From Oikopleura dioica (taxonomy: Eukaryota; Animalia; Chordata), in NCBI GenBank assembly GCA_907165135.1, contig OU015566.1, positions 1,550,001 through 1,614,000 on the forward strand: DNA of 64,000 nt, read 5' to 3'. Of this stretch, positions 1,452-35,731 are shown in pieces. Within the stretch, counting starts at the first letter, position 1. Every line of letters begins with the position of its first letter. The translations under genes were made by a program, and so were the position numbers. A model generated the notes under the pieces. That model was not told the DNA's origin and searched no databases. It saw nothing but the letters and a program-made list of their open reading frames with translations.

Positions 1452-4400
1452 TCATACAACGAAGTCGAGATAGTAGACCATTTGGCGACGATTATTCCAG
1501 ACGAAGAGAGCTTTCTCGCGCATGTTGTATTGCATTTGCACGATATGACTAAAATAAAAAAAATTTCGAAATCGACGAAGAGAATTATTTACTGATAGCT
1601 GTCTGGGTACTCCACATGAATATCTCTTGTTCTTCCGCTGATTGTATCGATCGCGTATCTATAAAAAAGAAAGAAGAGCATTCTTTTGAAAGTTTACCGA
1701 ATAACACCATCTTTCTTCCCATCAGGCTCGGTCGCATAGAGGACACCACACATCATGAAGATATGCCCTATCTGCTTTGTCGTCGTAGAAGTTTCGATAA
1801 TTTGCTTGACGCTCAAATCCTTAGGGTCGAGGAGCTGAAGCTTCAACCGCTCTTCTTGGTGGTAGTCTTGTGGGCTTACTGACGGGTAGATCACCTTAAT
1901 TTTATTTTTTGAAAACCAGTAGGTAGATGAAAATCCTACCCAGAGACCCCGTTGATCAACCGAAAGCGTAATCCAACTATGCCCTTTCCACGTAAAAGGC
2001 GAGTCAGAATCGTAAATTGCGTCGGAAAGATGTGTCCAGGCGACCATCTCCTGATCCTTCAGGTTGTAACTCACGATATTGCTGAAAACAGAAATTCTTC
2101 TCAATAAGCTCATTTTTTCCTTACCGGGTAAAAGCCCGATTGTAGTAGAAATGCTCATTGTAGACCACATGACCAGTTCCGATGTAGTAGAAGGGGAGAG
2201 TGTGGCGTTTTCGATACCGGAGGTCCTTAAAATGATTAAGAAAAGGGATGAAGAGGGGGGAGGGACAAACCCTGAATCGTTTGGTATCAGAAAACTCCAG
2301 AAGATGATTTCCATAGTAAAAATTCGCGACATAAACGGCTCTTCTTCCACTAGAACTTTTCGGCTTTATTTCGAGATGATCATTTATAAATTTTGAAAGA
2401 GAGAAAAAGTGGTATCTTGAAATGGGAATGATCAATTAGACGGGTAGGAAATCATTCAAATAAATCTCTCATTAGGACGCCTGTGGCGGTATAAGCGAGC
2501 CGCCACCGGATCTCATGGATCATCTCTCGCGCACTCTGAGTTCCTTTGGATCCATCATCCACGCGCCTTCGCGGCGACCCCATGTGTGGAAAACTTTTGC
2601 CTGTCTTCGTGTTTTACAGACAATAGAAGCTAAAGAATCTCTTATTTCCGACTTTTTCGAAAAAAGGGAAGTCTAAAAGATAATCTTCTAATGATAGCCA
2701 AGCTTAAAATTTATGATTTTCGAATCGAAAATTTTTCGATACCTACCTCCTTATTTCAATCAAAATATAAATCAAGTCTTTTGTAAAACAAATCCTTTCT
2801 CACATTATTCAGCGTCCATGTGCAAAGGCTGTTGCTGATTTCTCGCCGCGACTTGTCATCTCGTTTCCTTTTCGTTTGTGACATCACTTGAGTGATTGGT
2901 TTTGGTGTTGTTAGGAGAAGCGTTGTTGGTTTTGAAGTTGGAATGGAAGTTGTTGATTTTCGCGTCGTTGTAGTTATAGTTGTTTTCTTTGTTGTTGTCG
3001 ATGTTGTCGTCGTTGTCGTAGTCGTGCTTGTCGTGGTGGTTGTGGTCGTTGGTTTCTCTGTTGTTGATGTGGTTGTCGTTGAAGTGGTCGTGGATGTTGT
3101 TGTCGTTGTTGTTGGCTTCTTTGTTGTCTTGGTTGTAGAAGTCGTTGATGTTGTTGAAGTGGTCGTTGTTTTGATGGTTGGTTTTGAGGTTGTTGTAGAA
3201 ATCGTTGTTGTTTTTACAATTTGAGACTCTGTTGTTTCATTATCTTCAATGTTTAATCTCCTCGTCGTAATTTCATTGTTTTCATGAAATTTGTTTACTT
3301 TACAATCGGTTGACAAAATTATACGTTCTTTTGAGTGATTTTTTAAAGCGAAATAGATTTTGCTAACCAATAACTGAGCTAAGCGAAACATCCATTTCAA
3401 ATAACTTTGAAGTCATTTTCGGCTGATCCGTCGAGTTTTTCTCCTCGATCCTTGGCATTGTTCTCGTCAAAATGCCAATTGTTGCCGGCGCAGCTGGAGG
3501 ATTTTTGGTAGGCGTCACGATTTCCGGCTCTTCAAAAGGGATAACGGTTGTGGTTTCTGTTTTCGTTGCTGTTGTTGTTTCAGAAATCGGCGTTGTTGTT
3601 TGCTTTTCTTTTTCAAATCGCGTCATTTCTGGAAGCTCAAAAACAGCACTTGTCACGGATTCTTCATTTTCCAGCGTCTGAAAAAAGAGGGATGAGAAAA
3701 ACTTCCGTCGAACCGGATTCGAACCAGTGACCTAGAGATAACTGCTAACCCTCTACAGTCTCCCGCTCTGCCAACTGAGCTATCGACGGGCGGAAGTGCT
3801 AATTTTATGAACCATTAATATACAAGATATCGGCTCGACACAATTTCAGGAGTTAAGAAGATTTGGAGTGACAAAACCTGGAGCAACCGAAATTTTCAAA
3901 CCGATTTTTAAGGGTGTTAGGGGCCTCCCGGCCCCCTCAAACCCTGGCGAAAACCCGGCTTTGGGCCCGGGCTTTCTTTTGACCGAGTCAGATATCCTTA
4001 ATTATGACTTTAACACCCTTAAAAATCGGTTTGAAAATTTCGGTTGCTCCAGGTTTTGTCACTCCAAATCTTCTTAACTCCTGAAATTGACTTTTGCCCA
4101 AGATATCATATTTAATCCCCCTCTACAAGATTTAAAGAAAATATGTTTATTTTTTTGTCAAAAAGAAGTTCCAGAAAATGCCATAAATAACTCTTGAAAC
4201 AGCGAAAAAACATATTTATGGTTCCTGCTTCAAATATTTAATACCGTTGTTTCCGCCGTAGTCGTAGTCGTAATCTGCTCGTTTTCGTCAGCTTTCTGCT
4301 TCCGCGCGCTTTCAACGAGCTCTTTGAACTTGCTCGACTTGTTCTCTTCCTCGATGATTCCGACAAGATTGTCGAGTTTTGACTTGAGAACGGATGTCTT

Positions 4401-4869: not shown

Positions 4870-6062
4870 AAATAACCCTCTTTTTTATTCCCCAAAAACC
4901 GTTGACCTTGTTGAAAAGCTCAAAGGATGATATCACGCTTTTGGATTAGCAAGGACACGGTGGTAAAAAGTTGTGGTCTGTAATTGACTACTGTTTTTGC
5001 TTCATTTTATTTTGATTTGATAAATCACAACATTATTTGAGCCGAGCGATCAATCCATAAACGGCTGTAATCATCATAATTTAAACACTTTTGTCAGACT
5101 TTGACGTCCGCCGCCTTTGTTGCGTGTTTAAGACTAGCCATTATCGTTAAAATCGAGGCAGGCCACTTCAAAAGATCTTTTCGAGTTAATCTACTACCGA
5201 CGAAATTGAATTAAGCTCATCAATGAATCAGCAAAAAAGGAAACAATTATGAAAAAAAAACAAAGTTTTTCCACAAAAAAATTGGATGGAAAATCCAAAT
5301 CTTTTAAAATTTTCTATCAAATTTAACGTCCTTTTATATTAATTTCACTTTTTTATCAACGAAATTTTCTATCAAAAATCAACATATCGACTTTGTCAAG
5401 TTTTTTGCCTCAAAAATAGGATAGGACTTGCTTTTTAGGCAAAAAAATTTAGATGAGTTTTTCATTAATTACCTGATTAAAAATTGCTATAAAAATTGCC
5501 GCTTTTAAAATTCTTCTCATTCTTGCCCTTCTTTCTTTTTTCTCGATTCTGTCTTCAAAAATTTTCAGTTTTCATTTTTTTATTTTCTTTGTCAATTTCA
5601 TTCTTTTTTCGATCCTCTTTCTTGTTTTTCCTTCTCGAGCTTGTTTAGTTTCTTCAGTAAAAATTATCGGCGGCGCTGTTTTTTTATCTCTTTTTTTCTT
5701 TCTACGGCGCCCTCGGAAAACAACGACGGAAAAACGGTCAACAGACGGGCTGAGAGGAAAAAGGGTTGAAAAGGTGATAAGGTCACAAAATCGCTGGGCA
5801 AAAGAAGGACTCCTTTTTTTGAGGCTTTCAAGGGAGGTGCTTACAAGCGACACTTTGTGACAGATGCTCTCGCCAAAGCCGAAACGGGACAATGTCAACA
5901 GCTAAGGCCCAGTGAGATTAGCTTCAAGGGCAGCTAGCGTTGTTTTATGATTTAGGGGATATCGGCAAAGGATTATTTTTTGACTCATGTTTAGGCTCAT
6001 GTTTATTTTAAGCTTTTAATATTTCGCCAAGAGATTTTTTTATATTTAAAAGAACTGGAACC

Positions 6063-6270
6063 CTAACCCTGAGCTTGCTGAGCTGTTGTCAAAATGGAGC
6101 TCGCGTCTTTCAAAAGCAACTGAGCTGAGCTGAGCTAGCTAAGCTGAAGTCAAAATTTAGCTAGCTGAGCTGAGCTGGCTTTTTTTAGAAAAAATGAGCT
6201 GAGCTTAGCTGACTCTCTTCTCGAAATTGCTGAGCTGAGCTGAGCTGAGCTTAGCTGTAGCTCAGGTTAC
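6063..6270. repeat. (CTGAG)n-rich element with imperfect inverted ends
   Basis: Many GCTGAGCTGAGC runs; ends TAACCCTGAGCT ... AGCTCAGGTTA; CCCTAACCCTAACCC nearby at 6361. Confidence 0.55.
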
Positions 6271-6666
6271 TTAGATAGGTCAGCTAGCTAAGTTCAGAAA
6301 ATTTGCAACTTTGAAGCTAACGCTAACCGGAACCCCGACCTATACGGCTAGGATTCGTAGCCCTAACCCTAACCCCTTTTTTCGACCATTCTAGCGCTCT
6401 TCAATAATATGTTTTTTTTTCGAAGCTGTCCCGTGCAGACCAGGTGGCAATCATAATTACGTTATAGCACTTCTCTTCAGAGAGCTGTGACCTTATGAAA
6501 ATCACCATTTCGCCCAGCTCATCTGTCAACGCCGGAAATCTCGAGTGCGACCACCCTCAACTACAAATGTCAAATCGAAGACATTGATCGGTTGCGTCTT
6601 GATTCACAGCCAAATATTTTTCGTTTTATAATCTGAGTGAAGATTTGGAAGAGAGGCAATTTATCA

Positions 6667-8180
6667 TGTCTTCGCAGGTTTTCTTCTTGCTTTGCCAAGA
6701 AACTCTTCGCTCAAAACGGTCAAATTATCCGCTTTGGAAGTTTCCAAATTTTCTTGTAAAACAAAAATTGACTCAGTTGTCGAACTGTCAGGAAAAAAGT
6801 CGTGACGACGACTCTCATAAACCGGGTTTTTCGTTTTTATCTTCAGAATTGTTTTTCTTTCTTACTCGAGATCAACTTCGATGGTTATAGAGGAAGAGTT
6901 CGAGAGCAATTCAAATGGGCAGCCCAAAATCAAGGTGATCAGAATTCGAAAAAAAGGAATAATGTAGATTTGAAAGTGTCTCGACTGCCATTGGATTGGC
7001 GTTCTAAGACAGAAAGATGATAAGGTCTACTTGTGCCCAGAAGAAGTTTTGTCTACGAGAAGCGTTCACACACGCAAACGCGACTTGAAGGAGGGGTAGT
7101 CGTGTTTAACAAGCTTTTTTTCATTACTCAAAACTTGAATATGATCACCCCATTTATTCAGAAAGAGCCGACGATGAAAAAAGTCGCCAGAAAATTGACC
7201 CTTGGAAAGCACGGATTCTCAACGCCCGGTCAGCAACGTTTTTACCTTGGAAATGGTTCAATCTTCTGGATAACCATCATCCTTATTAGTAATTTTCGTT
7301 AAATATAGTAGATAAAACGCTGTTTTTCCAGCGAATTGGTACTCTCTTCAAAGGTCACGAGGAGTAACGACATTTCTTACTTCGACTTGTCACCGCAACT
7401 ACAAAAAATGCGTGAAAATCACAACAATGGATTACTGCGGCCATTTGATGAAGGAATGCCACGAAACCGAGATGTTTATTCTTCCCGAGCCAATTTCAAA
7501 GATCGACCATGCAAAGGCTGAACCCTTAGTTTTCTCCGAAGAAGAAAATGATCTGAATTTCCTCCGATGTCAGAAGAAACAGTTCTACGACCAGAATATA
7601 TGCCGCCATCTTTGCTCAAAGACACTCGTACTTGAATCAACGCTGGCTAGTCCAGTTTCTCCTTGTGAATCAATTTGCTTCGAACTGACTAAATCAAGTA
7701 AGGGTGCCGGTGAAATCTGCCCAACTCAGAAATATTGCCAAACTGGCTGTCCGTGTCCTTTTTATGACTGCGAAAAAATGGAGTCGCGACAAAAAATGAT
7801 TCCTGTTTTTGAAACAAACTCAACAGATAGTATCAAATCGGGGACTTTCAATACTGAAACAAATACAGGCAGTAACATGGAGTTGATCACTGCCCGTTGG
7901 AATGAACGAGAAAATGAAAAACGCTTATTCTTTAAAATAAGCTTTTCCGATTTTGATGAGAATTTTCAAACAATCAATACTTCTGACTCGTTCTTTTCTT
8001 ATGAACGTTTTTGCTGACTCTTTTTTTAAATTAATCTCAAATCGACAAAAACGCAAAGTCGATGGGTGCAACTTTTTTAAATGGCGAGCACTATTTGGTT
8101 GATGCGATTGGTAGCTTGATGAGGCTGAGAGAAAATGGCGATACACCTATTTTTATCCCGAATCGGCATAAAAAAATGTA
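6667..8180 (+). CDS. Uncharacterised multi-exon Cys-rich protein (CPTQKYCQTGCPCPFYDC motif); ends approximate
   Basis: ORF 7033-7302 splices in frame (intron 7255-7331) to ORF 7412-8017, which has a dense Cys cluster; probable last exon GATFLNGEHYLVD at ~8060-8180. Confidence 0.5.
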
Positions 8181-8564
8181 AGTAGAATTTTCATATTTTT
8201 GGCAACTGATTGGCCGGTAAGCAGAATCCAGGATTCTGATTGGCTGTAAATTTCTTCGAAAAAATTGTCTCGATTTTTTTTTGTCGGCTCCTAACTGATC
8301 CCCCTTAATAAATCTAAGAAAATGATTTTCTCGTCTGTTTAGAGGTTTTTTTGTATTCCATTTTGGATCCTCGATTGGAACTCATCACATTGAGATTCGT
8401 TTAAAAGAGAACGACAAGAAGATCTTTCCCGTGGTGGCCATCTGAAAAAGGTCTTAAAATAATAGAAAGTCACTAGTAATTGTCTTTAACATGATTTTTG
8501 ACCAGAAACAAGTTCTCCGACTGCACGAAGCGATAAATGCTTTTATTTTGCTCCAGATTACCAT

Positions 8565-8879
8565 TTGAATCGATTTGAAGAGGCGCAAGGCTACATCGCG
8601 AGCAACCATTTCAACGCAAAAATGAGTTCAGTCAGCTTCAATGACATTTTCTATTTGATGAGTGTGACGATGGGCGACTATTATATAAAACTGTCCAAAA
8701 CAGTCGCACTTAACCGTTTAAGAAAAAGTGAAGAGCTAGAAAAAGGATGGAGAAAAGATGAAATACAGCTTCCGCCAGAATTCAGAGACTTGGATCCTGT
8801 CCATATCATCCCTTTGATAAGAGTTCAAAGAAGAATACTCATTTTTTTTGGGTTAAAACAATTGATGGAAATGATTTAG
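8565..8879 (+). CDS. Possible exon of an uncharacterised protein
   Basis: 104-codon open frame after a plausible acceptor (ctccag); no recognisable domain. Confidence 0.3.
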   Translation: MNRFEEAQGYIASNHFNAKMSSVSFNDIFYLMSVTMGDYYIKLSKTVALNRLRKSEELEKGWRKDEIQLPPEFRDLDPVHIIPLIRVQRRILIFFGLKQLMEMI

Positions 8880-9030
8880 TGGATCAGGGTGATAATTGGC
8901 CGGTCGGCCGAATACAGCAATCTTATTGATACTCAAAAATGCACTTCCATAAATTGGTTAAATCCCCTATTACTCAAAAAATCTCAGCAATATGAACAAG
9001 ATATTGTTTTTGAATTCAAAATAGAAAGAT

Positions 9031-10408
9031 ATGGGTAGACTTCTTCTTATTTTGGTCACAAGGAGTGTTGTTCTATCAAATTCACTGTACTCATTGTTGT
9101 TGGAAGCTGGCGGAAAATTTTTAAGGAGGGGGTCGACGAGAAAAATTTTTTCGCTTTTTCAAAATTTTGGTTATTTTTTTGGATTCCTTAATAAAAAAGG
9201 AACATTTTTCGTCTCCAGCTTTTTTGGCATTGACCAACTTTTTTTACCAAAATTTTCGTATCATTATCAGTAAAAAATTCCAAGTCTCGGCGCTTTTGGT
9301 AAAATTCTCCGAGAAAAATGAGCAAGAATGACGATTTTTAGGAAAATCGCATATTTTTAGTGAACAGAAAAATTTTTTTTTAATAAAAGCAGCCCGTTTT
9401 ATATTGCCGCCGTCGTATTTTAAAGGGTTTCAACTTACTATTAATTTAATTTGACGAAGAAAAAAAATCCCGTTTTCGAGATTTTTTGGTAACGAGTATT
9501 CCCCACTTTGACTCAATTTTTTGAAAATTTTTTCGAAAAAATTTTTTTTCTCGTTTTCGCCGCTGTATTTTTCAAACACTTTTCTTTCCCCCTGAAAAGT
9601 CAGAATTCGCCTATCTAAGCAGGTTTTTCCGGATTTTTGGTTACAGAAATCCCGATTCTCGTCGACCTCCCCCTTAAGCTTGGGAAGCGAGTGGATTGGC
9701 TCTCTTGTTAAATACGAAGAAAAATCTATCTGTTATTCAAGGTTGTTTGCTTTTGATGATCTCTGGTACACAGACCAAGGTGGATTCAACAACGACGAAT
9801 GCGAGTATTTTGGAAATGGAATCATCCACGAGGAGAGAATCTTTGTACAAAATTATGTTTTTGATTCACTATTTGAATTTGTGTTTAACTTTGAAGAAAT
9901 AAACATGGACATTATCCAGAGGGACGCCAGAAAGAAAATGCACGTGACGAGCAATCCCTATTTTGCGTTTCACGACGATGTCTTTCCCGCTTTCGCGAAA
10001 AATGCCGCCTCTCAGCCTCAATTTCCTCATCCAAGTTTCTACCACCAAACGATCATTCCTGACAACTTCTTTTCTTCGTTAGAAGAAATGACGCATATTT
10101 CAACCATTGAAATGAACTCGAATCGTAATGAGAAACTTCGATTTCAAATTTATTATCAATCTATTTCTTCCGTTGCAGTAGAAATAAATATTCTTGAATG
10201 CAATTTTATTAACGAAGAAACACTTTTTCATTTTGGAATCGGCAAGAATGGCTCGTTTTGGATCGAATCTGACTTTTTCAATAATCGGTTCATTTTTAGA
10301 AAAAGTTCATCTGAAATACAAGATTTTGAGCTTTATTTCAATTCAAATCATTTATTAGAGGCATCTTATATCATTGTTTTTGAGGTTAACTTTGTTGAGG
10401 GGAGATAA
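9031..10408 (+). CDS. Uncharacterised protein with hydrophobic N-terminus, whose ORF is interrupted by a TIR element that can be spliced out as an intron
   Basis: ORF 9031 (MGRLLLILVTRSVVLS...GGKFL) joins ORF 9680-10408 in frame when 9125-9673 plus one TTAA is removed. May continue into the kelch-like exons downstream. Confidence 0.6.
9125..9673. mobile_element. TTAA-flanked non-autonomous TIR element (MITE), candidate introner
   Basis: TTAA|GGAGGGGGTCGACGAGAA ... TTCTCGTCGACCTCCCCC|TTAA: 18-bp TIR with 2 mismatches; TTAA at 9121-9124 and 9674-9677. Confidence 0.85.
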
Positions 10409-10699
10409 CAACGAGTTAAATAAATTCCTATTAAGAACGGGAACAAAAAAATGATGAATTATTCGAGAATAAAGATAAAAGGACTGGAAAATAATAAGAA
10501 ATCAAAAGTCAGAATATTCAAAATGGACGGCAAAGCAAGAGTGAAGAATTTTATTTATATTACTGAAGTTGTCTCTCAGATTAATGTTATCCCATCTTAT
10601 GAGAAGCCTTATGCGATTTTACCTAATTTCCGAAATGGCGAAATGTCAAGAATAAAGGAAATATCCCTCTGAAGCCCAATTTATCACGTAGAAAGCTTT

Positions 10700-12060
10700 A
10701 AGCACTCTATTTATTATTCTAGAAATGCAATAGTAAATGATCGGTTGCATATATTTGGAGGGAACGATAATCAAAAGAGAGTAATAACAGTTTTATAATT
10801 CATTATGATATTTTAATTATTTTTTTATAGATCGCAAGATTAGACGGAACTCAATTTTTTGAATTATCTCTTCGCCTTCCTGAAGAAAGTTCAGGATCGC
10901 ATTATGTTTTAACAATTGAGGAAGGCAGCAAAGGTATCTTATTGTTTTACTTTAATTATTTTACTTGTAATGATGCTCATTCTTTAGCGAAAGCTTAAAA
11001 AGAAAAGAACATTTCAAATTCATTTTTTCATATATATTTGCGATTCATCTCAATTATGATTGTATACCGTGGTTTTCTATCTTAAGAGCGCCCAACTTAA
11101 GAGCGTTTTTGCCAATATTTTCCATATTTTGTCATCTGCAAAAATTCCAACTTTAGAGCGTTTTCGGTTATTTTAAATTAATAATCAGAATAACGTCTAT
11201 TTCAACCTGAAAAAATCATTAAAAAGTTGTTTCTGGCGCTTTTTCTTTGGTAAAATCATTGACTCTGATTCAAAGATCAAAAATATTTTATCATATGTAG
11301 CCTATATAATATAGGTAAAAATGACCTCGGATGCATTGTAAGAGTTCTGAAAAGAGTTCTTTTTAGCATCATTTTTTCCCACTGTCATCCTTGTTTGATC
11401 GTAATTTTTCCAACTTAAGAGCGTTTTGATCAACCCTTGTCATCCGAAAAACGCTCTAAAGATGGAAATCGACGGTGTTTAAGTAATTATTTGTAATTGT
11501 ATGTGCCACATTTTCAATGAATCGACAATAACATCGACTTTTAAACCGAGGGAGGTTCATACAGATGGTGAGCTTGGCTTCTACAATGATCGCTTGATCG
11601 TGATCGGAGGGTATTATGCATATGGAGTTGTTGAGGAATTGACTCAGAACGGATGGAAAATTCTTAAAAATATGAAGCACCCGAAGTAATAATTGAAAAA
11701 AGACATGTTTATTGAAATAATATTTAGAAATATTTATTTTTTTACTGCAGTCGGACTTCCTTCTGGAAGTCTTTTGACTATCTCAGGAATGCATTATATG
11801 AGACGGAATTATTATCCAGACCCGGAACCAATACAAGAAATCTGGCGATTACGCAGAAACGAATGGTCTTTAGCCGGTTCGCTTATTACAGTTAGTGTTT
11901 TTTAACGTTTGATATTTAATCAAGGCATTTATCAAGGGGAGAGGCGATTTCAAAAAAAAACTTTTTATGTCGTTTTTCTAGATCAATATAATTTGTTCAA
12001 CTCCAGGCTTAATGATGAGGCCTTTATTTTGTTATTGCTGTTTGTAACTGCTTTCTAGTT
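10700..12060 (+). CDS. Kelch-like beta-propeller protein exons; boundaries approximate
   Basis: Repeated GG-type blade motifs: NDRLHIFGGNDNQKR, FYNDRLIVIGGYYAYGVVEELTQNGW, SGSLLTISG..IWRLRRNEWSLAGSL; separated by short introns. Confidence 0.55.
11151..11461. repeat. Intronic inverted-repeat element
   Basis: CTTTAGAGCGTTTTCGG (11151) vs CCGAAAAACGCTCTAAAG (11444-11461), plus extra AACTTAAGAGCGTTTT copies. Confidence 0.4.
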
Positions 12061-12786: not shown

Positions 12787-15700
12787 TCAAAGGCTAGTGC
12801 TTTGCCATACCGAATTTGTAGCTCCACAGCAATGAACGAACTCCTCAATATTTCCGACAATCGTTCTGCTTCTTGTCCCATCAAGTTTCGCATAAAACAG
12901 ATCATTCACGAAGAAAAAAGAGTATCCATCATCGCTGCCTTCGAACGCAGCTTTAATTCTGCTTGAATATCGCAGTCCTGGAATCCCGAGTCTCCGAGTT
13001 GAAATTCTTTTCACAATTCGATTTTCCTTCTCATCGAAAATTGAGATGAAGCGGCCAGCGATCAAGTAGGTGTAGCGGCGGTAGTCGTCGTTTTTACCTG
13101 TTCTTCGGTTGATGGCTGCAGTAAGTCTAGTTTATAAGATTATTTTTGAAACTCAAATCAGCCCTTTCGGCTCGGGGTGAGTTTGGTTTTCATTAAGAAA
13201 AAGATTCAAAATTCATACGATCGAAAACGCACTATGCTTAATATTTTGAAGACAATTATGGTTTTTCAACATCAAATTCGGCCGTTATTACCTCATATTT
13301 TTTGGAAGACCCAGTTCTGTTATAGACTTTGGAAAGCCGGGGAGAATTCTATTTCCATTGTACTCCCAATATTGAGCTCCAGAAAAGAATCGGACATTAC
13401 CAGTCGACCAAGGAAGATTCAAACCATCTAAACATTTTCAGATCTCCTTTCAGAGGAAAAGAACCTGGGACCATGTAAACCGCATCAATATGCGAAGGAA
13501 GTCCAGCCCAGTAAGATTCGACTTGAAGAGGTCCTCGCATTGACCATTTTTGATCATAAAAATGATGCTCTCCCGTAATTCGCCACAATTCACGACCCTT
13601 GAAGATGAATGTCTCGGATCCCCATTGAAGAATCGAATCAAAATCGCCATCGCAAAGGGAGTTATCATCGTAATTCGGTCTCTAGAAATCTTCAACGAAA
13701 ATTCCGTGTCATTTTTTACCTCGTTGTCGTCAATGTCCGGCTTATAGGTAGTTCTTGATCTTGTTGTCCATCTTTCTGTGGTGGTAGATCTCGTTGGTCT
13801 TGTCGATTGTCTGGTAGTCGTCGTTTCCATTTCCGGGAATTTCGTCGGATGAGTCATCCTTGTCGTCGTTGTTGGCCTCGACGTCCCCGTTGGAGGGCCG
13901 TAGAGCTGTTGAATTCCGTAAATATCATCCGCCGGCATTTTGAAGTTCTTCGTGAAATGGTACGACGGATACATCACGGCTTCTGGATTATTCGAGTGCC
14001 CAAGACCAAGGCTGTGTCCAAACTCATGAACTGCGACTAGAAAGAACGAGTACTCCCCGCCATCGCAAAAGCCCCACTCTCCATCGTTATCATAATTATC
14101 CGTTGTCGCGCACCAAAGAAGATTGTCCGTTCGACCTACTGTTGTGCAACTACTGTAACTGTTTGATTGAAAAATGAAGGGAAAATGGCAGCGTTTTCCA
14201 TTCGCATTTCCTCCTATAGCATCGTTTGGGCTGAATAGAAGTCAGGAAAGGGGGAAATAATGGGACTTACTGGGCGGGGCAAAAGCCATATCTATCCTTG
14301 TCCTCGTATCTTCGATCTGGACTGCACCAGAGATACCCATCTGTTCTCCCGTCAGTTGTGCAGGAATGATAAGTCTTGCCCTGAAAATCAAAAGGGAAGT
14401 TACAAGCTTCTCCTTCCGCATTTCCGCCATATGTATAAAGCGATCCTTCTCCACAAAATCCCCATTTTTTATCTTTGTCATAATCGTACGTCAGCGAGCA
14501 CCAGGTAAAATCCGTATTTTTGTACTTCAAACAGCTTCGGTGCTCGATCCCGTCTTTTGAAAACGGAAACTTGCAGTAGTAATTTCCTCCTTCCAGATGT
14601 TTCCCGACAGCCTTTGTGATTCTTCCTTCCCCAAGCGTCCAAAATTCATCCTCGTCAAAGTGCGCGTCTCCTTCGAGATCATTTGGGTAACCAGGGTCGT
14701 TGAAGAAAGCATGGGCGAGGGTTCCATGTTGCCCGTCGAATGGATAGCCATCCCAATGATCTCCGCGGCCGAATGAGATTTTGATATCGGCCGAGTCGTC
14801 TGCTGGGCCGAGATTGACCGGGCGAAGGTTGGCGACTTTCTCCCACTCGTGGAAAGCTTTGTCTACTGTATCATCCTGGATCTCGATCGGGAGATCATTC
14901 GAGTAACCGAACATTGAGTAAGAAACTGTATTGCCTGGCCAGGCAGGGCCGCCGATCTGGTACTTTGCTGGACCAGTGTTTTTCGAACGACTTTGATTCT
15001 GACTTTCGAAATCGGGTTTTCCGCATCTCGGTTTTTCAAGAACTTCCATCAGCTGTTGATCCAGTATCCCAGTTTCTCTCAAACCATATTGCTTTTGAAT
15101 TTTTTTAACTATCCCTGGAATCGAATTTTTAGCGATTTGAGCATTCTTCTCTGTGTAGCCAAATCGCTGAGCGAAATCAAGGAGGACTTCCTCTTCCGAA
15201 AATGATTTTGAAGAAATTCTTCCTGGCGGCTCGATGTTTTTAAAGTGTTCCATGCTTCCAGGATTCAACCGGCCTCTCTTTATGTGAATCTCATCTTGCT
15301 TCTCTCCTGGCGGACCAAGATGCCCAAAATGAAGCTGTTTCGGGACCCAGTTTGGCAGGTCTCTGTTTCTAGCAGACATGGCGATCGGACCTTTTCCCGA
15401 CGACCGAAAGTAGTTTGGCAAAGTCTTCATTTTGTCCTCCAGCAGAGAAACTAGCTCATTTGTGAGGGATCTGTCCCTAGAATCAACAGAATCGGCAACA
15501 CGACTGATTTTTTCAGAAAGCGAAAGTTCATGAGGAATTCTAGCGATGATTTGGTACTGCTCAAAAATCAGCTGTTTTTCCGTCTCGGAGTAGTTTTTGA
15601 TCACTCTTGAAGCCGAAACCCCTTTAATTTCTTATCACTTTTCTCATCAAATTTTTCTACCTGGAGCACTCGGCTGCCACTGACTATTTATGGGAACTTT

Positions 15701-15787
15701 TGGACGATCTCTGAAAGATCCTGGAGCTCCTCCTCTTTGGCCATCTACCGTTGCTTCTAGAAGAAGCAGATAAAAAGATAACTTCAT
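12787..15787 (-). CDS. MMP2/9-like: Gelatinase-type matrix metalloproteinase (MMP2/MMP9-like)
   Basis: Signal peptide [12 protein letters not shown], cysteine switch PRCGKPD, catalytic domain with three fibronectin type II inserts, zinc motif [12 protein letters not shown], Met-turn VMYP, Thr-rich hinge, hemopexin repeats. Confidence 0.95.
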
Positions 15788-16364
15788 TCTTATTCTCAGA
15801 GACTCAGAACTTGACCTGAGGTTGGCCCCTAATTTGTTTGTTTGGGCACACAATCATCGTGATCATCAGATGATTTTAGGATAAATTATTTTAAGAGAAT
15901 CTGCAGAACATTATTTATCCAAGATTTTTGAATCAAGAATAAAGAAAATTGATCTTTTGATTTTGTTTTTATTTCAGAACCGCAGACAAGTCGTAACGAT
16001 GGGTCGAAATTAAAAGGCGTTGATCTTCGAATTCGAACGATTGAAGTCGGGTCAATTGGGAAGGGAAAGATGAACGACGAAAGATGTGTTTTTTTTCAGA
16101 AAAGAGTTTAAACAAAACATAAAGGAGCAATATTTATACAAGGTTGAAATTCCAAAGGATAGAAAGGTTGAAATTGATGAAGAAACAAAAAGAGCAATAA
16201 ACCTTTTTTATCAAGTCAAATCCTGATTTTTACGAGTGACATTACTCATAAACTAAAATTGATAAAAGCAATTAAAATTCCTAAAAGTGAAATTTGGAAA
16301 CAAAAAGAAGTGAATAAGCAGGCAAGCAAGTTTTTTTCTCGAACTTTGCGATTTTTTCGTTTTG

Positions 16365-18745: not shown

Positions 18746-19321
18746 ATATGGTTCTTCATTGAATCTTATTAAAATCGCCAGTTCGGGGGAGACGCAATTT
18801 AATTAGCCAGGACGCGAGCTTTTCTACAGGGGCAAAATAACAACAGTATAATTGATTTCGCGCTTATTAACTTTCTCGGGAACTAATGTAGAAAAAAAAA
18901 CGAAGGTTTCTTGTAGAAATTTTGATGATCAAAGAACCATTCCTGTAAAACAAATATAAAGAATAGGTAAGAGGTCCGTCCAATACCAGTTTCCCATTTT
19001 CTTCTTAGACGATTCGACATAAATTGTCCATTTTCCGAGTTTCGTAAACGAACTACATGCGATCCGATGACATGCGACAGACTACACGCGTAAATCTGAA
19101 AATACGTTAATCAAAAAACGGCTTATTTGGACAATAAGAAAGACGCTTGAAAAAAAAAGAAGAAGAAAGAAACCGCAGGTTCCGCCAGAACAGACGCCGC
19201 AAATCAATGTTTATGAGCACAACCCACTCATATTTATTGAACCCAAGTTCTGGGCTCGCAAACCTGTGCAGAAATCTGAGTCAGGGTCCTAGTCTGGGGC
19301 CAAGACTGTAGGCTTGGAAAC

Positions 19322-19455
19322 CTGTGTAGAAAACCTAACTCAGGGTCTGATAGAGCTGTGACGAAAAGCCGCGAAGCGGCTTGTTTAAATACGAAGCCGC
19401 CTGTGCGGCTTTTCGGTTCAGCTCTTTCAGACCCTGACTCAGGATTTCTACACAG
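19322..19455. repeat. Short palindromic dispersed repeat, copy 1
   Basis: 29-bp inverted ends CTGTGTAGAAAACCTAACTCAGGGTCTGA with 3 mismatches; internal hairpin AAGCCGC-GAA-GCGGCTT. Confidence 0.75.
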
Positions 19456-20171
19456 ATTGCCGAGCTCAGATCAAGACCCCTTAGAAAGACTTCAGGGAGA
19501 CTTTGTCTGTATTTCTTTCGTAACGAAAAATTCTCGATTGTTCTTATTTTTTTAAATCGCCTAGAATCAGGGATTTGTGTTTCTCGTCGCACAAGATGTT
19601 AATTTTAGCATGTTTCAAATCTGGCACTTGTGAGATCCGGATCTGAAGCCGAGAGGCATAAATCCATCAAAGCACCCGATCAACAAACAATTCAATATTC
19701 TCGTCTTTTCTTCTCATTATCCGCCTTTTTATCGGCGACAAAGACCGATTTTCGAAGCGCAAATATGAAAATAGACAAGTGCGGTTGACACTTACACGGT
19801 TTTATGCTTGATATGTTTCTCAAATAACACAATTTTACAAGTTATAAGCTAGCAGCAGCCTCTTGCCTGTCACTGAAGCCGTGACTAGTTGATGAGTTTC
19901 GAGTCAGATGACGAATATTGCCAATAACTCTGGCTGTCTGCAAAGAATAAGGCTGAACAGTCCATTGACATCTGACTTCTCGAAACGCATCATCTACTTA
20001 AGGCTCTGGGGCAGGGTTAATTGCGTAATGGAGGGTTCGATTGAGTTTGAAGTTGAACTAATGTCTCTCAAATTGTCGCTAGAATTACTGTACCTCAGCA
20101 GAACTATCGTTTAAATTTTAATAAAAAGCTAATACTGGCATTAACTTGGCTCTTGGCTCCAAACCGTTTGA

Positions 20172-20243
20172 AGAAAACCTGACTCAGGGTCCTGAAATAA
20201 AGGCTTTTCCACGTAGTTTTCGAGACTCTGAGTCAGGTTTTCT
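20172..20243. repeat. Short palindromic dispersed repeat, copy 2
   Basis: 20-bp inverted ends AGAAAACCTGACTCAGGGTC / GACTCTGAGTCAGGTTTTCT. Confidence 0.7.
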
Positions 20244-20519
20244 CCAAAGGATGCGGAGCCTCGACTTGGCTTGAATCATAGAATTCTCTTTGAAGACAGT
20301 TTTTATTGCCAGAAAAGGCAATATAGTTTTAACGCTTTATTATAAATGGTATCGCGCCATATTTGCGCGGAATGTGAAAACAAAGGAAAGCCGATCGTAA
20401 AGGCCTTAGAATCAACAAAGCTAAAATAAGTTACATAATTGTCAGGCCTTTTTCAGTCCTCAAAAGTTCAATTATTAAAACACATTCCTAAGGTACCAAT
20501 AGGCTCGGCAATCTGACTC

Positions 20520-21983: not shown

Positions 21984-24900
21984 TTATTGCGACAGTCCCA
22001 ATTTCAATGAATGAATTTCGCGATCAACAGCATCCAGTTCAATTTCAAGCTGATCCTTTCGTTGTCTCGCTTTATGTCTGCTTGCACCATCAGTGCCAGA
22101 ATCGAGCATGCGGAGGGAGCGAGAAAGTTCGGAGCGTTTTTGTTTCATTGATTTTAATTCGTGTTCCATCGAGTCGTATTGTTTCAGACGGCTGGCGAAG
22201 CGGTTTGCTACAGTATTTACTGAAAGAAGATTCAATTCTGTGCTCTGCGATCCTGTCTGGAAACCTGAGTCAGGGTCCAAAAAGCGGCTTTTCCAAAAAA
22301 AAGCCGCAAAAATCATTGTCAAACGGTCCCACGCGGCTTATCCCTTCAAGCATTTTCAGGACCCTGACTAAGGTTTCTACTCAGGTTTTTGACATTTTCT
22401 ACCTTGATTTTCAGGCCAAGCATCAGAAGTCACAGAATTCTCCCGTGGTGATCGTTTCGGGCTTCTCGTCGCCAAGTCCCAGTTCGAGTGCGATTTCTGA
22501 ACAAGTTTTCATTTTTTAATTACAATTTTCTAACAGTGAGTCCAGTCGAATTTCGCTGAGAAGTTGATCTGGTCGACAATCGAGAAATCTGAGAAAGATT
22601 GGAAATTGACTTCGTTTTCGACAAATTCGTCCGGATCGAGTTGCCAGTAGTCGTTGTTGTTTTCGTCGAGCGGCGGCTTTCGGCGAGCGAAGATAGGGAC
22701 ATTCTAGAGCCATATCGCGGAAGATAATTTGGGACTTCTTGCTGCTTTGGTTTCTTTGGGCTGCCAAGTTGACGATTTGGGTATTTTGGAGTGGAAGGTG
22801 AATTGAGGCTCAAGTTGTGCATCGAAACTGATGATGAAAGATCAAGCCTAGATTGAAAATACAGTCATTCTTACGAATCTGTTTAGTACCTTGGAGACCA
22901 GTAATTTGATCCGCGCAAGTCTTCGCTTTCGTAGCTTGAATCGTTCGAAATTAGGTACCCGCTGAAGTCAGAATGGTCATTTTTGGTCATCAATTTTTGT
23001 TGTTCTTTCAGCCCAAAACTGATTAGGTACACCAGGGACTACTTTTTAGTCCAAGAAAAAATAATTTTTTTTTTGAAAAATTTTCCACGTGACCATTTTC
23101 TTAGGAATAAATCATGTTTTTTGGCTCCCATTTGTAACCCCATCCCACCCCATCTTTGAAATAGGTACAGATCGAAAGAGCGTAAAAAACGCTTTCCAAA
23201 TATGTTATTCATCGAACGGCCAGAAGCGGCCGAAAAATTCTAGAGCCAAAAGAAACCTGAAAATTCAAAATTTTCGTCGAGCCCCGGTGTTCGAATCCCG
23301 ACGATGACACTTTTTTTCGGAGCGTATTTATTCTGTTTTTTCTTCAAAAAGAATACTTTTGGACCGAAAACTGAAAAAATTGACATCTTGAGGTCGCTAG
23401 AGAGCATTTCCAAAAGAAATTAATTCAGAATAACTTCTTAATCTTCTAAATAGTAGAAATTAAGAAAAAAAAAACACCATAATTTACAGAACCGGAAAAA
23501 ACACCAGGGAAAAATATTCAAACGGGTGCGGGTGGGGTTGGGGAAAGGGCTTCTGTCTTCTCATCCCGGCCAATGTCAAGCCCATTTTTAATTGAAAGCC
23601 AGGGAAGGGGGCTGAGACGGCCCTTCGGGCCGTCAAGCCCATTTTTAATTGAAAGCCAGGGAAGGGGGCTGAGACGGCCCTTCGGGCCGTCAAGCCCATC
23701 TTTAATTGAAAGCCAGGGAAGGGGGCTGAGACGGCCCTTCGGGCCGTCAAGCCCATTTTTAATTGAAAGCCAGGGAAGGGGGCTGAGACGGCCCTTCGGG
23801 CCGTCAAGCCCATTTTTAATTGAAAGCCAGGGAAGGGGGCTGAGACGGCCCTTCGGGCCGTCAAGCCCATTTTTAATTGAAAGCCAGGGAAGGGGGCTGA
23901 GACGGCCCTTCGGGCCGTCAAGCCCATCTTTAATTGAAAGCCAGGGAAGGGGGCTGAGACGGCCCTTCGGGCCGTCAAGCCCATTTTTAATTGAAAGCCA
24001 GGGAAGGGGGCTGAGACGGCCCTTCGGGCCGTCAAGCCCATTTTTAATTGAAAGCCAGGGAAGGGGGCTGAGACGGCCCTTCGGGCCGTCAAGCCCATTT
24101 TTAATTGAAAGCCAGGGAAGGGGGCTGAGACGGCCCTTCGGGCCGTCAAGCCCATTTTTAATTGAAAGCCAGGGAAGGGGGCTGAGACGGCCCTTCGGGC
24201 CGTCAATCCCATTTTTAATTGAAAGCCAGGGAAGGGGGCTGAGACGGCCCTTCGGGCCGTCAATCCCATTTTTAATTGAAAGCCAGGGAAGGGGGCTGAG
24301 ACGAAAGCCAGGAAGGGGGCTTCGGGCCGTCAATCCCATTTTTAATTGAAAGCCAGGGAAGAGGGGCTGAGACGGCCCTTCGGGCCGTCAAGCCCATTTT
24401 TAATTGAAAGCCAGGGAAGGGGGCTGAGACGGCCCTTCGGGCCGTCAATCCCATTTATAATTGAAAGCCAGGGAAGGGGCTGAGACGGCCCTTCGGGCCG
24501 TCAATCCCATTTTTAATTGAAAGCCAGGGAAGGGGGCTGAGACGGCCCTTCGGGCCGTCAATCCCATTTTTAATTGAAAGCCAGGAAGGGGGCTGAGACG
24601 GCCCTTCGGGCCGTCAAGCCCATTTTTAATTGAAAGCCAGGGAAGGGGCTGAGACGGCCCTTCGGGCCGTCAAGCCCATTTTTAATTGAAAGCCAGGGAA
24701 GGGGCTGAGACGGCCCTTCGGGCCGTCAAGCCCATTTTTAATTGAAAGCCAGGAAGGGGGCTGAGACGGCCCTTCGGGCCGTCAAGCCCATTTTTAATTG
24801 AAAGCCAGGGAAGGGGGCTGAGACGGCCCTTCGGGCCGTCAAGCCCATTTTTAATTGAAAGCCAGGGAAGGGGGCTGAGACGGCCCTTCGGGCCGTCAAT

Positions 24901-34507: not shown

Positions 34508-35731
34508 CCGCCGTACTAGTTCCATAAAGTAAAGGGCATCCGGTGCTATCGAAAGCAAAAAGTCGCGAAAACGAAATTCCGGTTCAAATATCAAACTTGC
34601 GCCAGCGCTGCAGCGATAAGTTTTACAAGTCGATAGCATCTTCTATCGCGTGAATAGACAGCTAAAATACGAAAATACAGTGGATAAGAATCGCCAGGAA
34701 TGAGCTAGAATGGAACGCTGCCCTACATCGTAAGATTGCGAGATTTTCTTAGGAGAATTTGAAACTTTCTGAATGGAGACGTCATTCTAGAACAAAAAAG
34801 GAAGAATAACCATAAGAAAATCGGGTTAAACCAATTTATGAATGGAGGGTTTTGATTGGCCGACAGGCCAAATTTAGCAATCTCATTGGTCATCAAATAA
34901 TGTACTTCCATAAATTGGTTGAGTCAAGTAAATGCGATATTTTGTCTTTCTGGCTGAATAATGCATCCGATTTCAAAATTTCGGCCGAAAATTCATTAGG
35001 AAAATTTTATATTCAAAAGTGTAATGGAATCTTATATCGCGTGGAAGGTCTTTTATGCTTCGGTTGACTGCTTTCCATCCACTTTGTTAAGAAAATATAA
35101 AGTTACCCTACGAGCCGTGCTGATTACCTTCCACAAAAAGCGCATCGAGAGAAAAAAACTTCAAGGTAATAAATTTAAAATTTGTTAATTCCGATATCTC
35201 TATCTTCTATCAAATCGCCTAGATAATCAAAAGTAAACCTGCAGAGTCTTGCACTTTGCCATTTGCATCTTTTGAGACAGGGCTCAATAAAAATGAAACG
35301 CAATAAAAATGGTTTGCAGCTTTGAAAAATCATAAAAATCCAACCTTTTTCGGAAAAAATTCTTGAAATTTTTAGCAAGAGAAAATTGTCTTTTCGTGAA
35401 AGAAGGCCTTTATTGAAGGTAAATTCTAAAAGACAAAAATGATTTGATTTTGAAACGCAAAAGATTATTATATTGTCTTTTGAGTGTAGTATTTTCCGTT
35501 CTCAAGTCCGCGCTCAGCGGGAGAAGGTCTCTCCTTCTTGTCTTTTTGATTTGGCGAGAATAATCCTTTTTGGTTCAGCCCCAATTTCGGCTTATTATTT
35601 GTGACATCTTCGGCGGCTGAATTTCCTCCACGCTTGTTAAATAATTTCAATTTTCAGAAAATTCAAAAACTCAGAAAAAAAATTTAACAAAAAAACTTCA
35701 AAAAGAAGACTAAACAAAAAATTCCAGCAAG

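What the first reader, a model, noticed from the sequence alone, without database searches (positions are those of the whole stretch)
9121..9679. Transposon that behaves as a complete intron (candidate introner) in a coding exon
Seen: a 549-bp TIR element with a TTAA duplication splits one reading frame (empty site reads GGKF-L-S-LGSEW). The downstream TTAA plus the next G gives an AG acceptor at 9677-9678. Two donors inside the left TIR both restore the frame: GA at 9126 gives the exact pre-insertion protein (553-nt GA-AG intron), and GT at 9132 gives an RRG-for-S change (547 nt). Known: Oikopleura uses many non-canonical GA-AG introns, and TIR elements can create introns. Inference: intron gain caught in the act, with the TIR pre-wired as a splice donor.
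Basis: partly seen in the sequence, partly recalled or inferred. Interest (0 to 1): 0.85.

Follow-up and report, generated by a model that had tools for sequence, protein, structure and literature searches.

The report
Transposon in exon, possible new intron
A 549-bp non-coding transposon sits exactly inside a conserved coding exon of a larvacean-type gene and could be spliced out as a brand-new intron, but with one copy and no RNA data this is a well-formed candidate, not a demonstrated case.

Summary
TTAA (9121-9124), a 549-bp element (9125-9673) with 18-nt terminal inverted repeats (16/18 match), and TTAA (9674-9677) interrupt one exon (9025-10384). The gene belongs to a multi-copy family with no Pfam domain; its only named members are Oikopleura dioica proteins. 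Of 50 homologues spanning the site, 49 read straight through it with the spacing of the reconstructed empty site, and a paralogue's DNA carries a single TTAA there. Removing 553 nt (GA 9126 ... AG 9678) restores the family protein exactly.

Splicing is not shown. No other copy, empty allele or transcript was found in the window or in any collection I could search. The "pre-wired donor" claim is overstated: 29% of all G..AG pairs around the element are in-frame and stop-free. A more canonical-looking donor (TCA|GTAAAA, 9270) is also in frame with AG 9678.

Context raises the prior for splicing. The same gene has a 68-nt interruption with no GT-AG solution. A related environmental gene carries a different small TIR element in this same exon, has an empty-site counterpart, GC..AG boundaries built from a 3-bp AAG duplication, and dN/dS of 0.13.

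Verdict: plausible nascent transposon-derived intron (about 0.45); a gene-breaking insertion is nearly as likely. Transposon-derived introns are already known in larvaceans.

The parts
9121..9124 (+). left copy of the TTAA target-site duplication (codons TTA A..)
   Evidence: a single TTAA at the homologous site in paralogue L008
9125..9673 (.). 549-bp non-autonomous TIR element with an AT-rich interior and no ORF longer than 54 aa
   Evidence: no other copy in the window
9125..9142 (+). left terminal inverted repeat GGAGGGGGTCGACGAGAA; holds candidate donors GA (9126) and GT (9132)
9656..9673 (+). right terminal inverted repeat TTCTCGTCGACCTCCCCC; a C/T-rich run directly upstream of the candidate acceptor
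9674..9677 (+). right copy of the TTAA duplication; its last A plus flanking G 9678 forms the candidate AG acceptor
9126..9678 (+). candidate 553-nt GA..AG intron; its removal restores the family protein exactly (..GGKFLSLGSEW..)
9132..9678 (+). alternative 547-nt GT..AG intron (GGG|GTCGAC); replaces S with RRG, a +2 residue spacing seen in none of the 49 homologues that read through the site
9270..9678 (+). alternative 409-nt intron from the most canonical-looking donor (TCA|GTAAAA); in frame, but would add about 49 element-derived residues to the protein
9025..9125 (+). upstream part of the interrupted exon (KDMGRLLLILVTRSVVLSNSLYSLLLEAGGKFL-)
9679..10384 (+). downstream part of the interrupted exon (-SLGSEWIGSLVKY...IIVFE)
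8823..9024 (+). upstream 202-nt GT..AG intron at a position shared with paralogues (read through in P0094, P0096, P0235); contains a 75-nt repeat also found at 34846-34920
10385..10435 (+). inferred 51-nt in-frame GT..AG intron containing two stop codons
8445..8512 (+). 68-nt lineage-specific interruption of the same gene with no possible GT-AG boundaries (AA..AG, or GA..AA if shifted by one base)

Best explanation
A small non-autonomous DNA transposon (549 bp, 18-nt G-rich/C-rich inverted ends, TTAA duplication, no coding capacity) inserted into the TTAA that spans the Leu-Ser codons of the long central exon of a larvacean-type multi-copy gene. That much is shown. The rest is inferred: the insertion is tolerated because the pre-mRNA loses it as an intron. 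The 3' splice site would be the AG formed by the last A of the duplicated TTAA plus the flanking G (9677-9678), preceded by the C/T-rich right inverted repeat acting as a pyrimidine tract. The 5' splice site would be AAG|GAGGGG at 9126, where the exonic AAG comes from the left TTAA plus the element's first G. Using these sites removes exactly the element plus one TTAA (553 nt) and gives back the pre-insertion protein. This is the same logic as introners, where one splice site comes from the element and the other from the duplicated target. Pairing of the inverted repeats would bring the two sites together.
For: Transposon hallmarks are present and beyond chance. The site lies inside a conserved exon, and 49 of 50 homologues spanning the site read through it with identical spacing. 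A single TTAA sits at the homologous site of a paralogue. The flanking reading frames are long and intact in 33-36% GC DNA: 242 codons downstream, and further exons up to about 11884 still align to homologues. GA-AG introns are reported as unusually frequent in O. dioica, with an upstream AG as here. O. dioica has 11-12% non-canonical introns. The same gene has a 68-nt interruption that cannot be GT-AG yet restores colinearity exactly when removed. It also has other long transposon-bearing introns of 166, 202 and about 600 nt and an existing intron ending ...TTAAG. In a related gene (L001) a different small TIR element sits in this same exon. An empty-site counterpart exists (L013), the boundaries are GC..AG built from an AAG duplication, the 127-nt insert would shift the frame, 271 codons remain open after it, and dN/dS is 0.13. 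The inverted repeats form the closing stem in both the minimum-energy and centroid folds.
Against: There is no RNA evidence of any kind. Only one copy was found, so no family behaviour can be examined. The donor is weak and non-canonical, and reported GA-AG donors in O. dioica are followed by A, not G. Better-looking GT donors lie inside the element, notably GTAAAA at 9270, and a good acceptor (TTTTTGGTTACAG|) at 9646 competes. The 21-bp G/C-rich stem would bury both the donor and the pyrimidine tract, and the whole-element fold is not unusual (z = -0.91). Homology-supported introns of a neighbouring MMP gene are 37-40 nt and GT-AG, so a 553-nt GA-AG intron is atypical here. The gene has other oddities that could instead mean early decay: the 68-nt non-canonical interruption and in-frame stops at 10406, 10421 and 10670, which need inferred introns. 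The family is large, so loss of one member may be nearly neutral.
Confidence: 0.45

Rival explanations
1. The insertion simply breaks the gene. It is recent (or sits in a member already decaying) and is not spliced. Translation runs 50 codons into the element and stops at 9271-9273. The insertion persists because this family is large and redundant, or because the assembly captured a rare allele.
For: The upstream frame ends inside the element. Only a single copy was found. The TTAA duplication is perfect and the flanks are intact, which fits a very recent event that selection has not yet acted on. The donor is non-canonical. The same gene has other irregularities: a 68-nt interruption without GT-AG, and stops at 10406, 10421 and 10670. 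There are at least 60 family representatives at the 50% identity level.
Against: All other interruptions of the gene are 'clean': their removal restores the frame and colinearity, and no frameshift or stop lies within homologous exon sequence. If the 2 mismatches in 18 nt between the inverted repeats arose after insertion, the event is old enough that a 242-codon AT-rich frame should have broken. This argument is weak, because the repeats may have been imperfect from the start. The lineage tolerates small TIR elements in this exon under purifying selection.
Confidence: 0.35
2. The element is spliced, but from other sites. Part of it becomes exon (GT 9270 to AG 9678 adds about 49 residues; GT 9132 adds 2 residues), or use of the acceptor at 9646 shifts the frame. 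The product would be an altered or partly functional protein, or a mixture of isoforms.
For: TCA|GTAAAA at 9270 resembles donors of homology-supported introns in this window (GTAAGT and GTAAAA in the MMP gene) and is in frame with AG 9678. 130 of 450 G..AG pairs are in-frame and stop-free. The donor at 9270 lies outside the terminal stem, whereas 9126 and 9132 lie within it.
Against: None of the 49 homologues that read through the site has any extra residue there. A 49-residue low-complexity insertion inside the most conserved block would probably be harmful.
Confidence: 0.15
3. Assembly or haplotype artefact: the element is misplaced, or present on one haplotype only.
For: Nothing specific; a single sequence cannot exclude it.
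Against: The precise TTAA duplication at a site where paralogues have a TTAA, with perfectly in-frame flanks, is what a true insertion looks like and not what a mis-join looks like.
Confidence: 0.05

Closest known systems
Introners: small DNA-transposon families that create introns on insertion (Micromonas, Aureococcus; later found in many eukaryotes; Huff et al. 2016, Gozashti et al. 2022, as summarised in PMC11282704 and PMC9860276)
   Same: A short non-coding TIR element with a target-site duplication makes up the whole candidate intron. One splice site lies in the element end, and the other is completed by the duplicated target plus flanking sequence. Exact removal restores the coding sequence.
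   Different: Introners are defined as families with many near-identical intronic copies and RNA evidence of splicing; here there is one copy and no RNA. The candidate donor is GA rather than GT. A TTAA duplication was not mentioned in the two introner papers I searched for the term.
MITE-derived non-canonical introns of the larvacean Fritillaria borealis (Henriet et al. 2019, as described in PMC11282704 and PMC13326754)
   Same: Same animal group (larvacean-type gene family). The intron would carry inverted repeats at its ends, sits at a lineage-specific position, and depends on a permissive spliceosome.
   Different: Fritillaria introns are mostly AG-AC or AG-AT and are the majority class there. 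In this window, homology-supported introns are mostly tiny GT-AG introns, and the candidate boundaries are GA-AG.
GA-AG introns and transposon-insertion intron gains reported for Oikopleura dioica (Denoeud et al. 2010, as cited in PMC3443670 Table 1 and PMC8008620; GA-AG statistics in PMC7072748)
   Same: GA donor preceded by an exonic AG; AG acceptor; a genome with very high intron turnover. Transposon insertion is already listed as a source of new Oikopleura introns.
   Different: The window is not shown to be O. dioica. Reported GA-AG donors have A at position +3, whereas here it is G. Typical introns are about 40-50 nt, not 553 nt.
TTAA-duplicating DNA transposons (piggyBac-type and other TTAA-targeting superfamilies) and their miniature derivatives
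   Same: 4-bp TTAA duplication, short terminal inverted repeats, small size, AT-rich non-coding interior.
   Different: The termini read GGAGG.../...CCTCC rather than the CCC...GGG ends I recall for piggyBac (from memory, not tested). No transposase partner was found, so the superfamily is undetermined.

Membership tests
Introner (intron-generating transposon family) | Transposon hallmarks: terminal inverted repeats plus a target-site duplication | tested here: met
   18-nt inverted repeats match at 16 of 18 positions and TTAA lies on both sides; 0 chance matches in 100 shuffles. The duplication is supported by homologue spacing and by a single TTAA in paralogue L008.
Introner (intron-generating transposon family) | The element (plus one duplication copy) is the whole intron, with splice sites at the element end and the duplicated target | tested here: inconclusive
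   GA 9126 ... AG 9678 removes exactly 549+4 nt and restores the family protein. This is sequence compatibility only, and competing sites exist at 9132, 9270 and 9646.
Introner (intron-generating transposon family) | Many similar copies forming introns in unrelated genes | not testable with these tools
   There is no second copy in the 64-kb window or in 7 related loci. Scans of JGI metagenomes, GTDB genomes and IMG/VR gave only unrelated bacterial hits or none. The source genome itself is not available.
Introner (intron-generating transposon family) | Removal from transcripts shown by RNA data | not testable with these tools
   No transcript or orthologue of this gene is present in the protein collections; the best identity to window exons is about 81%.
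Miniature inverted-repeat transposable element (MITE) | Under about 800 bp, inverted ends, target duplication, no coding capacity | tested here: met
   549 bp; longest internal ORFs are 45-54 aa; AT-rich low-complexity interior.
Miniature inverted-repeat transposable element (MITE) | Multi-copy in the genome | not testable with these tools
   Single copy in all sequence available.
piggyBac superfamily derivative | TTAA target-site duplication | tested here: met
piggyBac superfamily derivative | Characteristic CCC...GGG termini and a cognate transposase with matching ends | tested here: not met
   The termini are GGAGGGGG.../...CCTCCCCC. The consensus is recalled from memory, not checked against a repeat library. 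No transposase was seen among the window ORFs examined, which was not a full survey.
Fritillaria-type MITE-derived non-canonical intron | AG-AC or AG-AT type boundaries | tested here: not met
   The six equivalent exact-restoring placements are TT..CC, TA..CT, AA..TT, AG..TA, GG..AA and GA..AG; none is AG-AC or AG-AT.
Fritillaria-type MITE-derived non-canonical intron | Inverted repeats at the intron ends and a lineage-specific position | tested here: met
   DNA of paralogues L001, L008 and L013 is uninterrupted at this site.
O. dioica-type GA-AG intron | GA donor with exonic AG upstream and A downstream; AG acceptor | tested here: inconclusive
   The site reads AAG|GAG...TTAAG|C. The upstream AG and the acceptor fit, but position +3 is G, not A. 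The species is not established.

The most novel reading that the evidence does not exclude
This is the first visible copy of a TTAA-targeting introner family in a chordate. Both ends start with G followed by a G-rich run, so in either orientation the far end reads as a C/T-rich pyrimidine tract followed by TTAA. Any landing at TTAA|G (about 1 in 4 sites) would then create a precisely excisable G(A/G)...AG intron. Together with the second small TIR family seen in this exon in relatives (AAG duplication, GC..AG), it would mean that oikopleurid-type larvaceans, not only Fritillaria, are gaining introns from DNA transposons now.
Probability: 0.15. Interest if true: 0.8.

Novelty: new member of a known kind. 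Interest (0 to 1): 0.5.

Why it matters
How new spliceosomal introns arise is a long-standing question, and larvaceans are the animals with the most extreme intron turnover. A transposon that makes up a whole intron, with the ancestral uninterrupted state still visible in dozens of paralogues, would be a directly testable snapshot of intron birth in a chordate. One RT-PCR and a presence/absence survey would settle it. If it is not spliced, it is an ordinary gene-breaking insertion in a redundant family.

Tried and rejected
1. An orthologue, empty allele or spliced transcript of this gene. Three protein searches gave at least 100 family members, but none exceeded about 81% identity to the window exons. 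This route gave no direct test.

2. Other copies of the element. A mismatch search and blastn in the window, blastn against 7 fetched related loci including 21 kb of O. dioica, and scans of JGI metagenomes, GTDB genomes and IMG/VR found nothing relevant. The hits were bacterial coding sequences that matched by chance (in the JGI scan, GC-rich contigs with a shared coding-like context) or there were none.

3. Pfam on the flanking ORFs: no domain.

4. Species identification through the MMP gene. The best named hits were vertebrate at 42% and Ciona at 37%, with no O. dioica hit, so I do not call the window O. dioica.

5. Relationship of the introns at 8178-8342 and 8823-9024 to the element. Only low-complexity matches were found; they share a different 34-75-nt repeat.

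6. Whole-element RNA structure as evidence. The z-score is -0.91 and not significant; only the terminal stem is notable.

7. Calling the gene a pseudogene from its in-frame stops. Each stop can be removed by a well-formed in-frame 51-nt GT..AG intron, but the region is too poorly conserved to decide.

8. L002, L008 and L009 as further clean examples of elements in this exon. Their upstream boundaries are ambiguous, so only the L001/L013 pair is used as evidence.

Full report
**1. The observation**

- TTAA lies at 9121-9124 and again at 9674-9677, bracketing 549 bp.
- The ends of the 549 bp are inverted repeats: GGAGGGGGTCGACGAGAA, and the reverse complement of the other end, GGGGGAGGTCGACGAGAA. 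They match at 16 of 18 positions (I1).
- Searching the 22-mer with up to three mismatches finds only these two ends in 64 kb; none is expected in 100 shuffles.
- The interior is AT-rich and low-complexity, with no ORF above 54 aa.
The two candidate introns are 553 and 547 nt.

**2. Both flanks are one exon of a real gene**

The 242-codon ORF downstream (to 10408) and the short frame upstream (from 9025) have no Pfam domain. An exhaustive HMMER search with the downstream ORF found 60 representatives, 47 of them at E below 1e-10. Word-indexed searches added more. Most come from marine metagenome assemblies. The only named members are 'unnamed protein product [Oikopleura dioica]' (P0069, P0222-P0224).

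Many homologues extend N-terminally and read without a break across the insertion site, for example P0094 ...SLLLEAGGKFLTLGSEWIGS....
- Of 50 family proteins spanning the site, 49 have identical spacing. The reconstructed empty site SLLLEAGGKFLSLGSEWIGS matches P0094 at 19 of 20 residues.
- tblastn of homologues onto the window stops at about 9135 and resumes at 9674 with contiguous query coordinates.
- Paralogue DNA (L008) has a single TTAA at the same codons (AAATTTTTAACAATTGGC).

TTAA is its own reverse complement, so the filled site alone cannot separate a target duplication from a longer inverted repeat. Only removal of 549+4 nt preserves frame and spacing, which supports a 4-bp duplication.

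**3. Gene context**

Homology mapping gives this structure:
- Exons at about 8047-8177, 8343-8444, 8513-8822, 9025-10384 (the interrupted exon) and 10436 onwards.
- Further exons at 10696-10797, 10823-10936 and 11558-11884.
- Introns at 8178-8342 and 8823-9024 are GT..AG. The second is at a position shared with paralogues and carries a repeat also present at 34846-34920.
- 10385-10435 is a 51-nt in-frame GT..AG stretch holding two stops.
- A TGA at 10670 can be removed by another 51-nt GT..AG stretch. That region is too poorly conserved to decide between an intron and a lesion.
- A 68-nt interruption at 8445-8512 cannot be GT-AG under any frame-preserving placement. Exact colinearity with P0235 and P0063 (FPVV.ICSPT) needs AA..AG or GA..AA.

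A neighbouring MMP2/9-like gene has 37-40-nt GT-AG introns. The genome therefore looks oikopleurid-like, with tiny and mostly canonical introns. This gene holds several long, repeat-bearing or non-canonical interruptions.

The species is not established. The MMP search gave no O. dioica hit, and no family protein exceeds about 81% identity to the window exons.

**4. Can it be an intron?**

Because the element starts with G and the base after the right TTAA is G, the direct repeat is effectively TTAAG. Six equivalent placements remove exactly 553 nt. One of them is GA..AG, with exonic AAG before the donor and the C/T-rich right repeat (CCTCCCCCTT) before the acceptor.
[quoted passage not shown] Here the downstream base is G.
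- O. dioica has 11-12% non-canonical introns (PMC8008620).
- The RNA fold puts the two repeats in a closing stem in both the minimum-energy and centroid structures. The overall energy is unremarkable (z = -0.91).
- That stem could juxtapose the splice sites, as proposed for Fritillaria and euglenid introns, or it could hide them.

**5. How special is the coincidence?**

- The upstream frame stays open 50 codons into the element, and the downstream frame is open 28 codons before its end. As a result, 130 of 450 G..AG pairs are in-frame and stop-free.
- The GT 9132 option therefore carries little weight, and its +2 residue product has no precedent among the 49 homologues that read through the site.
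- A more canonical-looking donor, TCA|GTAAAA at 9270, lies outside the stem. It is also in frame with AG 9678 and would add about 49 residues.
- A good competing acceptor lies at 9646.
- Exact-restoring G..AG boundaries follow automatically for this element at any TTAA|G site, in either orientation. That is a genuine but weak form of pre-adaptation.

**6. Evidence from relatives**

No other copy of this element was found anywhere I could search.

A second small TIR family (core AAAACCTGAGTCAGGGTC) occurs three to four times in the window. It also occurs inside this same exon in paralogues on environmental contigs L001 and L002.

L001 and L013 form a filled/empty pair at the DNA level.
- The empty site reads ...GTGACTCG-AAG-CAT....
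- The filled site has AAG on both sides of a 124-nt element. The total insert of 127 nt is not a multiple of three.
- The resulting boundaries are GC..AG, with GC from the element and AG from the duplicated AAG.
- The frame is open for 271 codons after the element.
- Coding dN/dS between L001 and L013 is 0.13, with dS 0.39 over 190 codons.

This is a more convincing introner-type event in the same lineage and the same exon. It raises the prior that small TIR insertions here are handled by splicing. It does not show when that insertion happened, and it says nothing directly about the TTAA element.

**7. What is known**

- Introners that use an element end plus the target duplication as splice sites are established in algae and many other eukaryotes.
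- MITE-derived non-canonical introns are described for the larvacean Fritillaria borealis.
- Transposon insertion is listed among the sources of new Oikopleura introns (PMC3443670 Table 1).
- A TTAA-duplicating example was not mentioned in the two introner papers I searched for the term.

The finding is therefore a possible new member of a known kind.

**8. Verdict**

| Reading | Confidence |
|---|---|
| Precisely spliced nascent intron (GA 9126 ... AG 9678) | about 0.45 |
| Unspliced, gene-breaking insertion in a redundant family member | about 0.35 |
| Spliced from other sites, giving an altered product | about 0.15 |
| Assembly or haplotype artefact | about 0.05 |

'Introner' membership fails for lack of copies and RNA evidence, neither of which can be tested with the data available. 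Interest is moderate: it would be high if RNA confirmed splicing, and ordinary if not.

Noticed in passing
window 19301-19480, 20146-20270, 22241-22400 (partial 19250-19290); L001 973-1099; L002 about 17-155; L013 about 1255: A second small palindromic TIR family (core AAAACCTGAGTCAGGGTC) is multi-copy in the window and sits inside the same exon of paralogues on marine-metagenome contigs. L001 and L013 are a filled/empty pair: 3-bp AAG duplication, 127-nt insert, GC..AG boundaries, 271 codons open after it, dN/dS 0.13. This looks like a real introner-type event.
   Followed up: partly
window 8445-8512: A 68-nt lineage-specific interruption between the exons ending ..FPVVAI(C) and starting SPTARSDKC has no frame-preserving GT-AG solution. 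Exact colinearity with P0235 and P0063 needs AA..AG or GA..AA. The only G-start options are GA..AG (92 nt, loses 8 residues) and GG..AG (77 or 80 nt), which loses 3-4 residues.
   Followed up: partly
window 10385-10435 and 10645-10695: In-frame stops (TAA 10406, TAA 10421, TGA 10670) in the same gene each lie inside a well-formed in-frame 51-nt GT..AG stretch. Whether these are tiny introns or early pseudogene lesions cannot be decided, because homologues are poorly conserved there.
   Followed up: partly
window 8886-8959, 34846-34920, 8209-8242: A 34-75-nt repeat (ATTGGCCGG...CAATCT.ATTG...) is shared by two introns of the gene and by a distant site (80% identity over 75 nt); probably another short repeat family.
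   Followed up: no
window 11092-11467: A 20-nt inverted repeat pair (11145-11164 / 11448-11467, 95% complementary) and further copies of CCAACTT[A/T]AGAGCG lie inside the gene's long intron (10937 to about 11540). This is another TIR-like element within an intron whose position is shared with paralogues.
   Followed up: no
window 3704-4089: A tRNA-Leu gene (3704-3789, minus strand) is followed 50 nt away by a perfect 79-nt inverted repeat (3841-3919 / 4011-4089).
   Followed up: no
window about 6060-6380; L002 1-16: Telomere-like CCCTAA runs flank a GAGCT-rich satellite upstream of the gene. A similar AACCCTAACC stretch starts contig L002, right next to its TIR element.
   Followed up: no
window 13290-15790 (minus strand): An MMP2/9-like gelatinase gene (Peptidase_M10 plus fibronectin type II domains) has 37-40-nt GT-AG introns. 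Its best named relatives are vertebrate gelatinases at 42% identity.
   Followed up: partly
window 46056-61636 (minus strand): Two giant open reading frames (1284 and 3909 aa) lie back to back. The first carries a G8 domain, suggesting a very large extracellular protein encoded with almost no introns.
   Followed up: no
L009 240-470: Another paralogue contig has a GC-rich palindromic insert ending ...CAAACAC directly before the TGG of LGSEW|IGS. There is no AG before the coding sequence resumes, so this is possibly an intron with a non-AG 3' end in a different larvacean.
   Followed up: no
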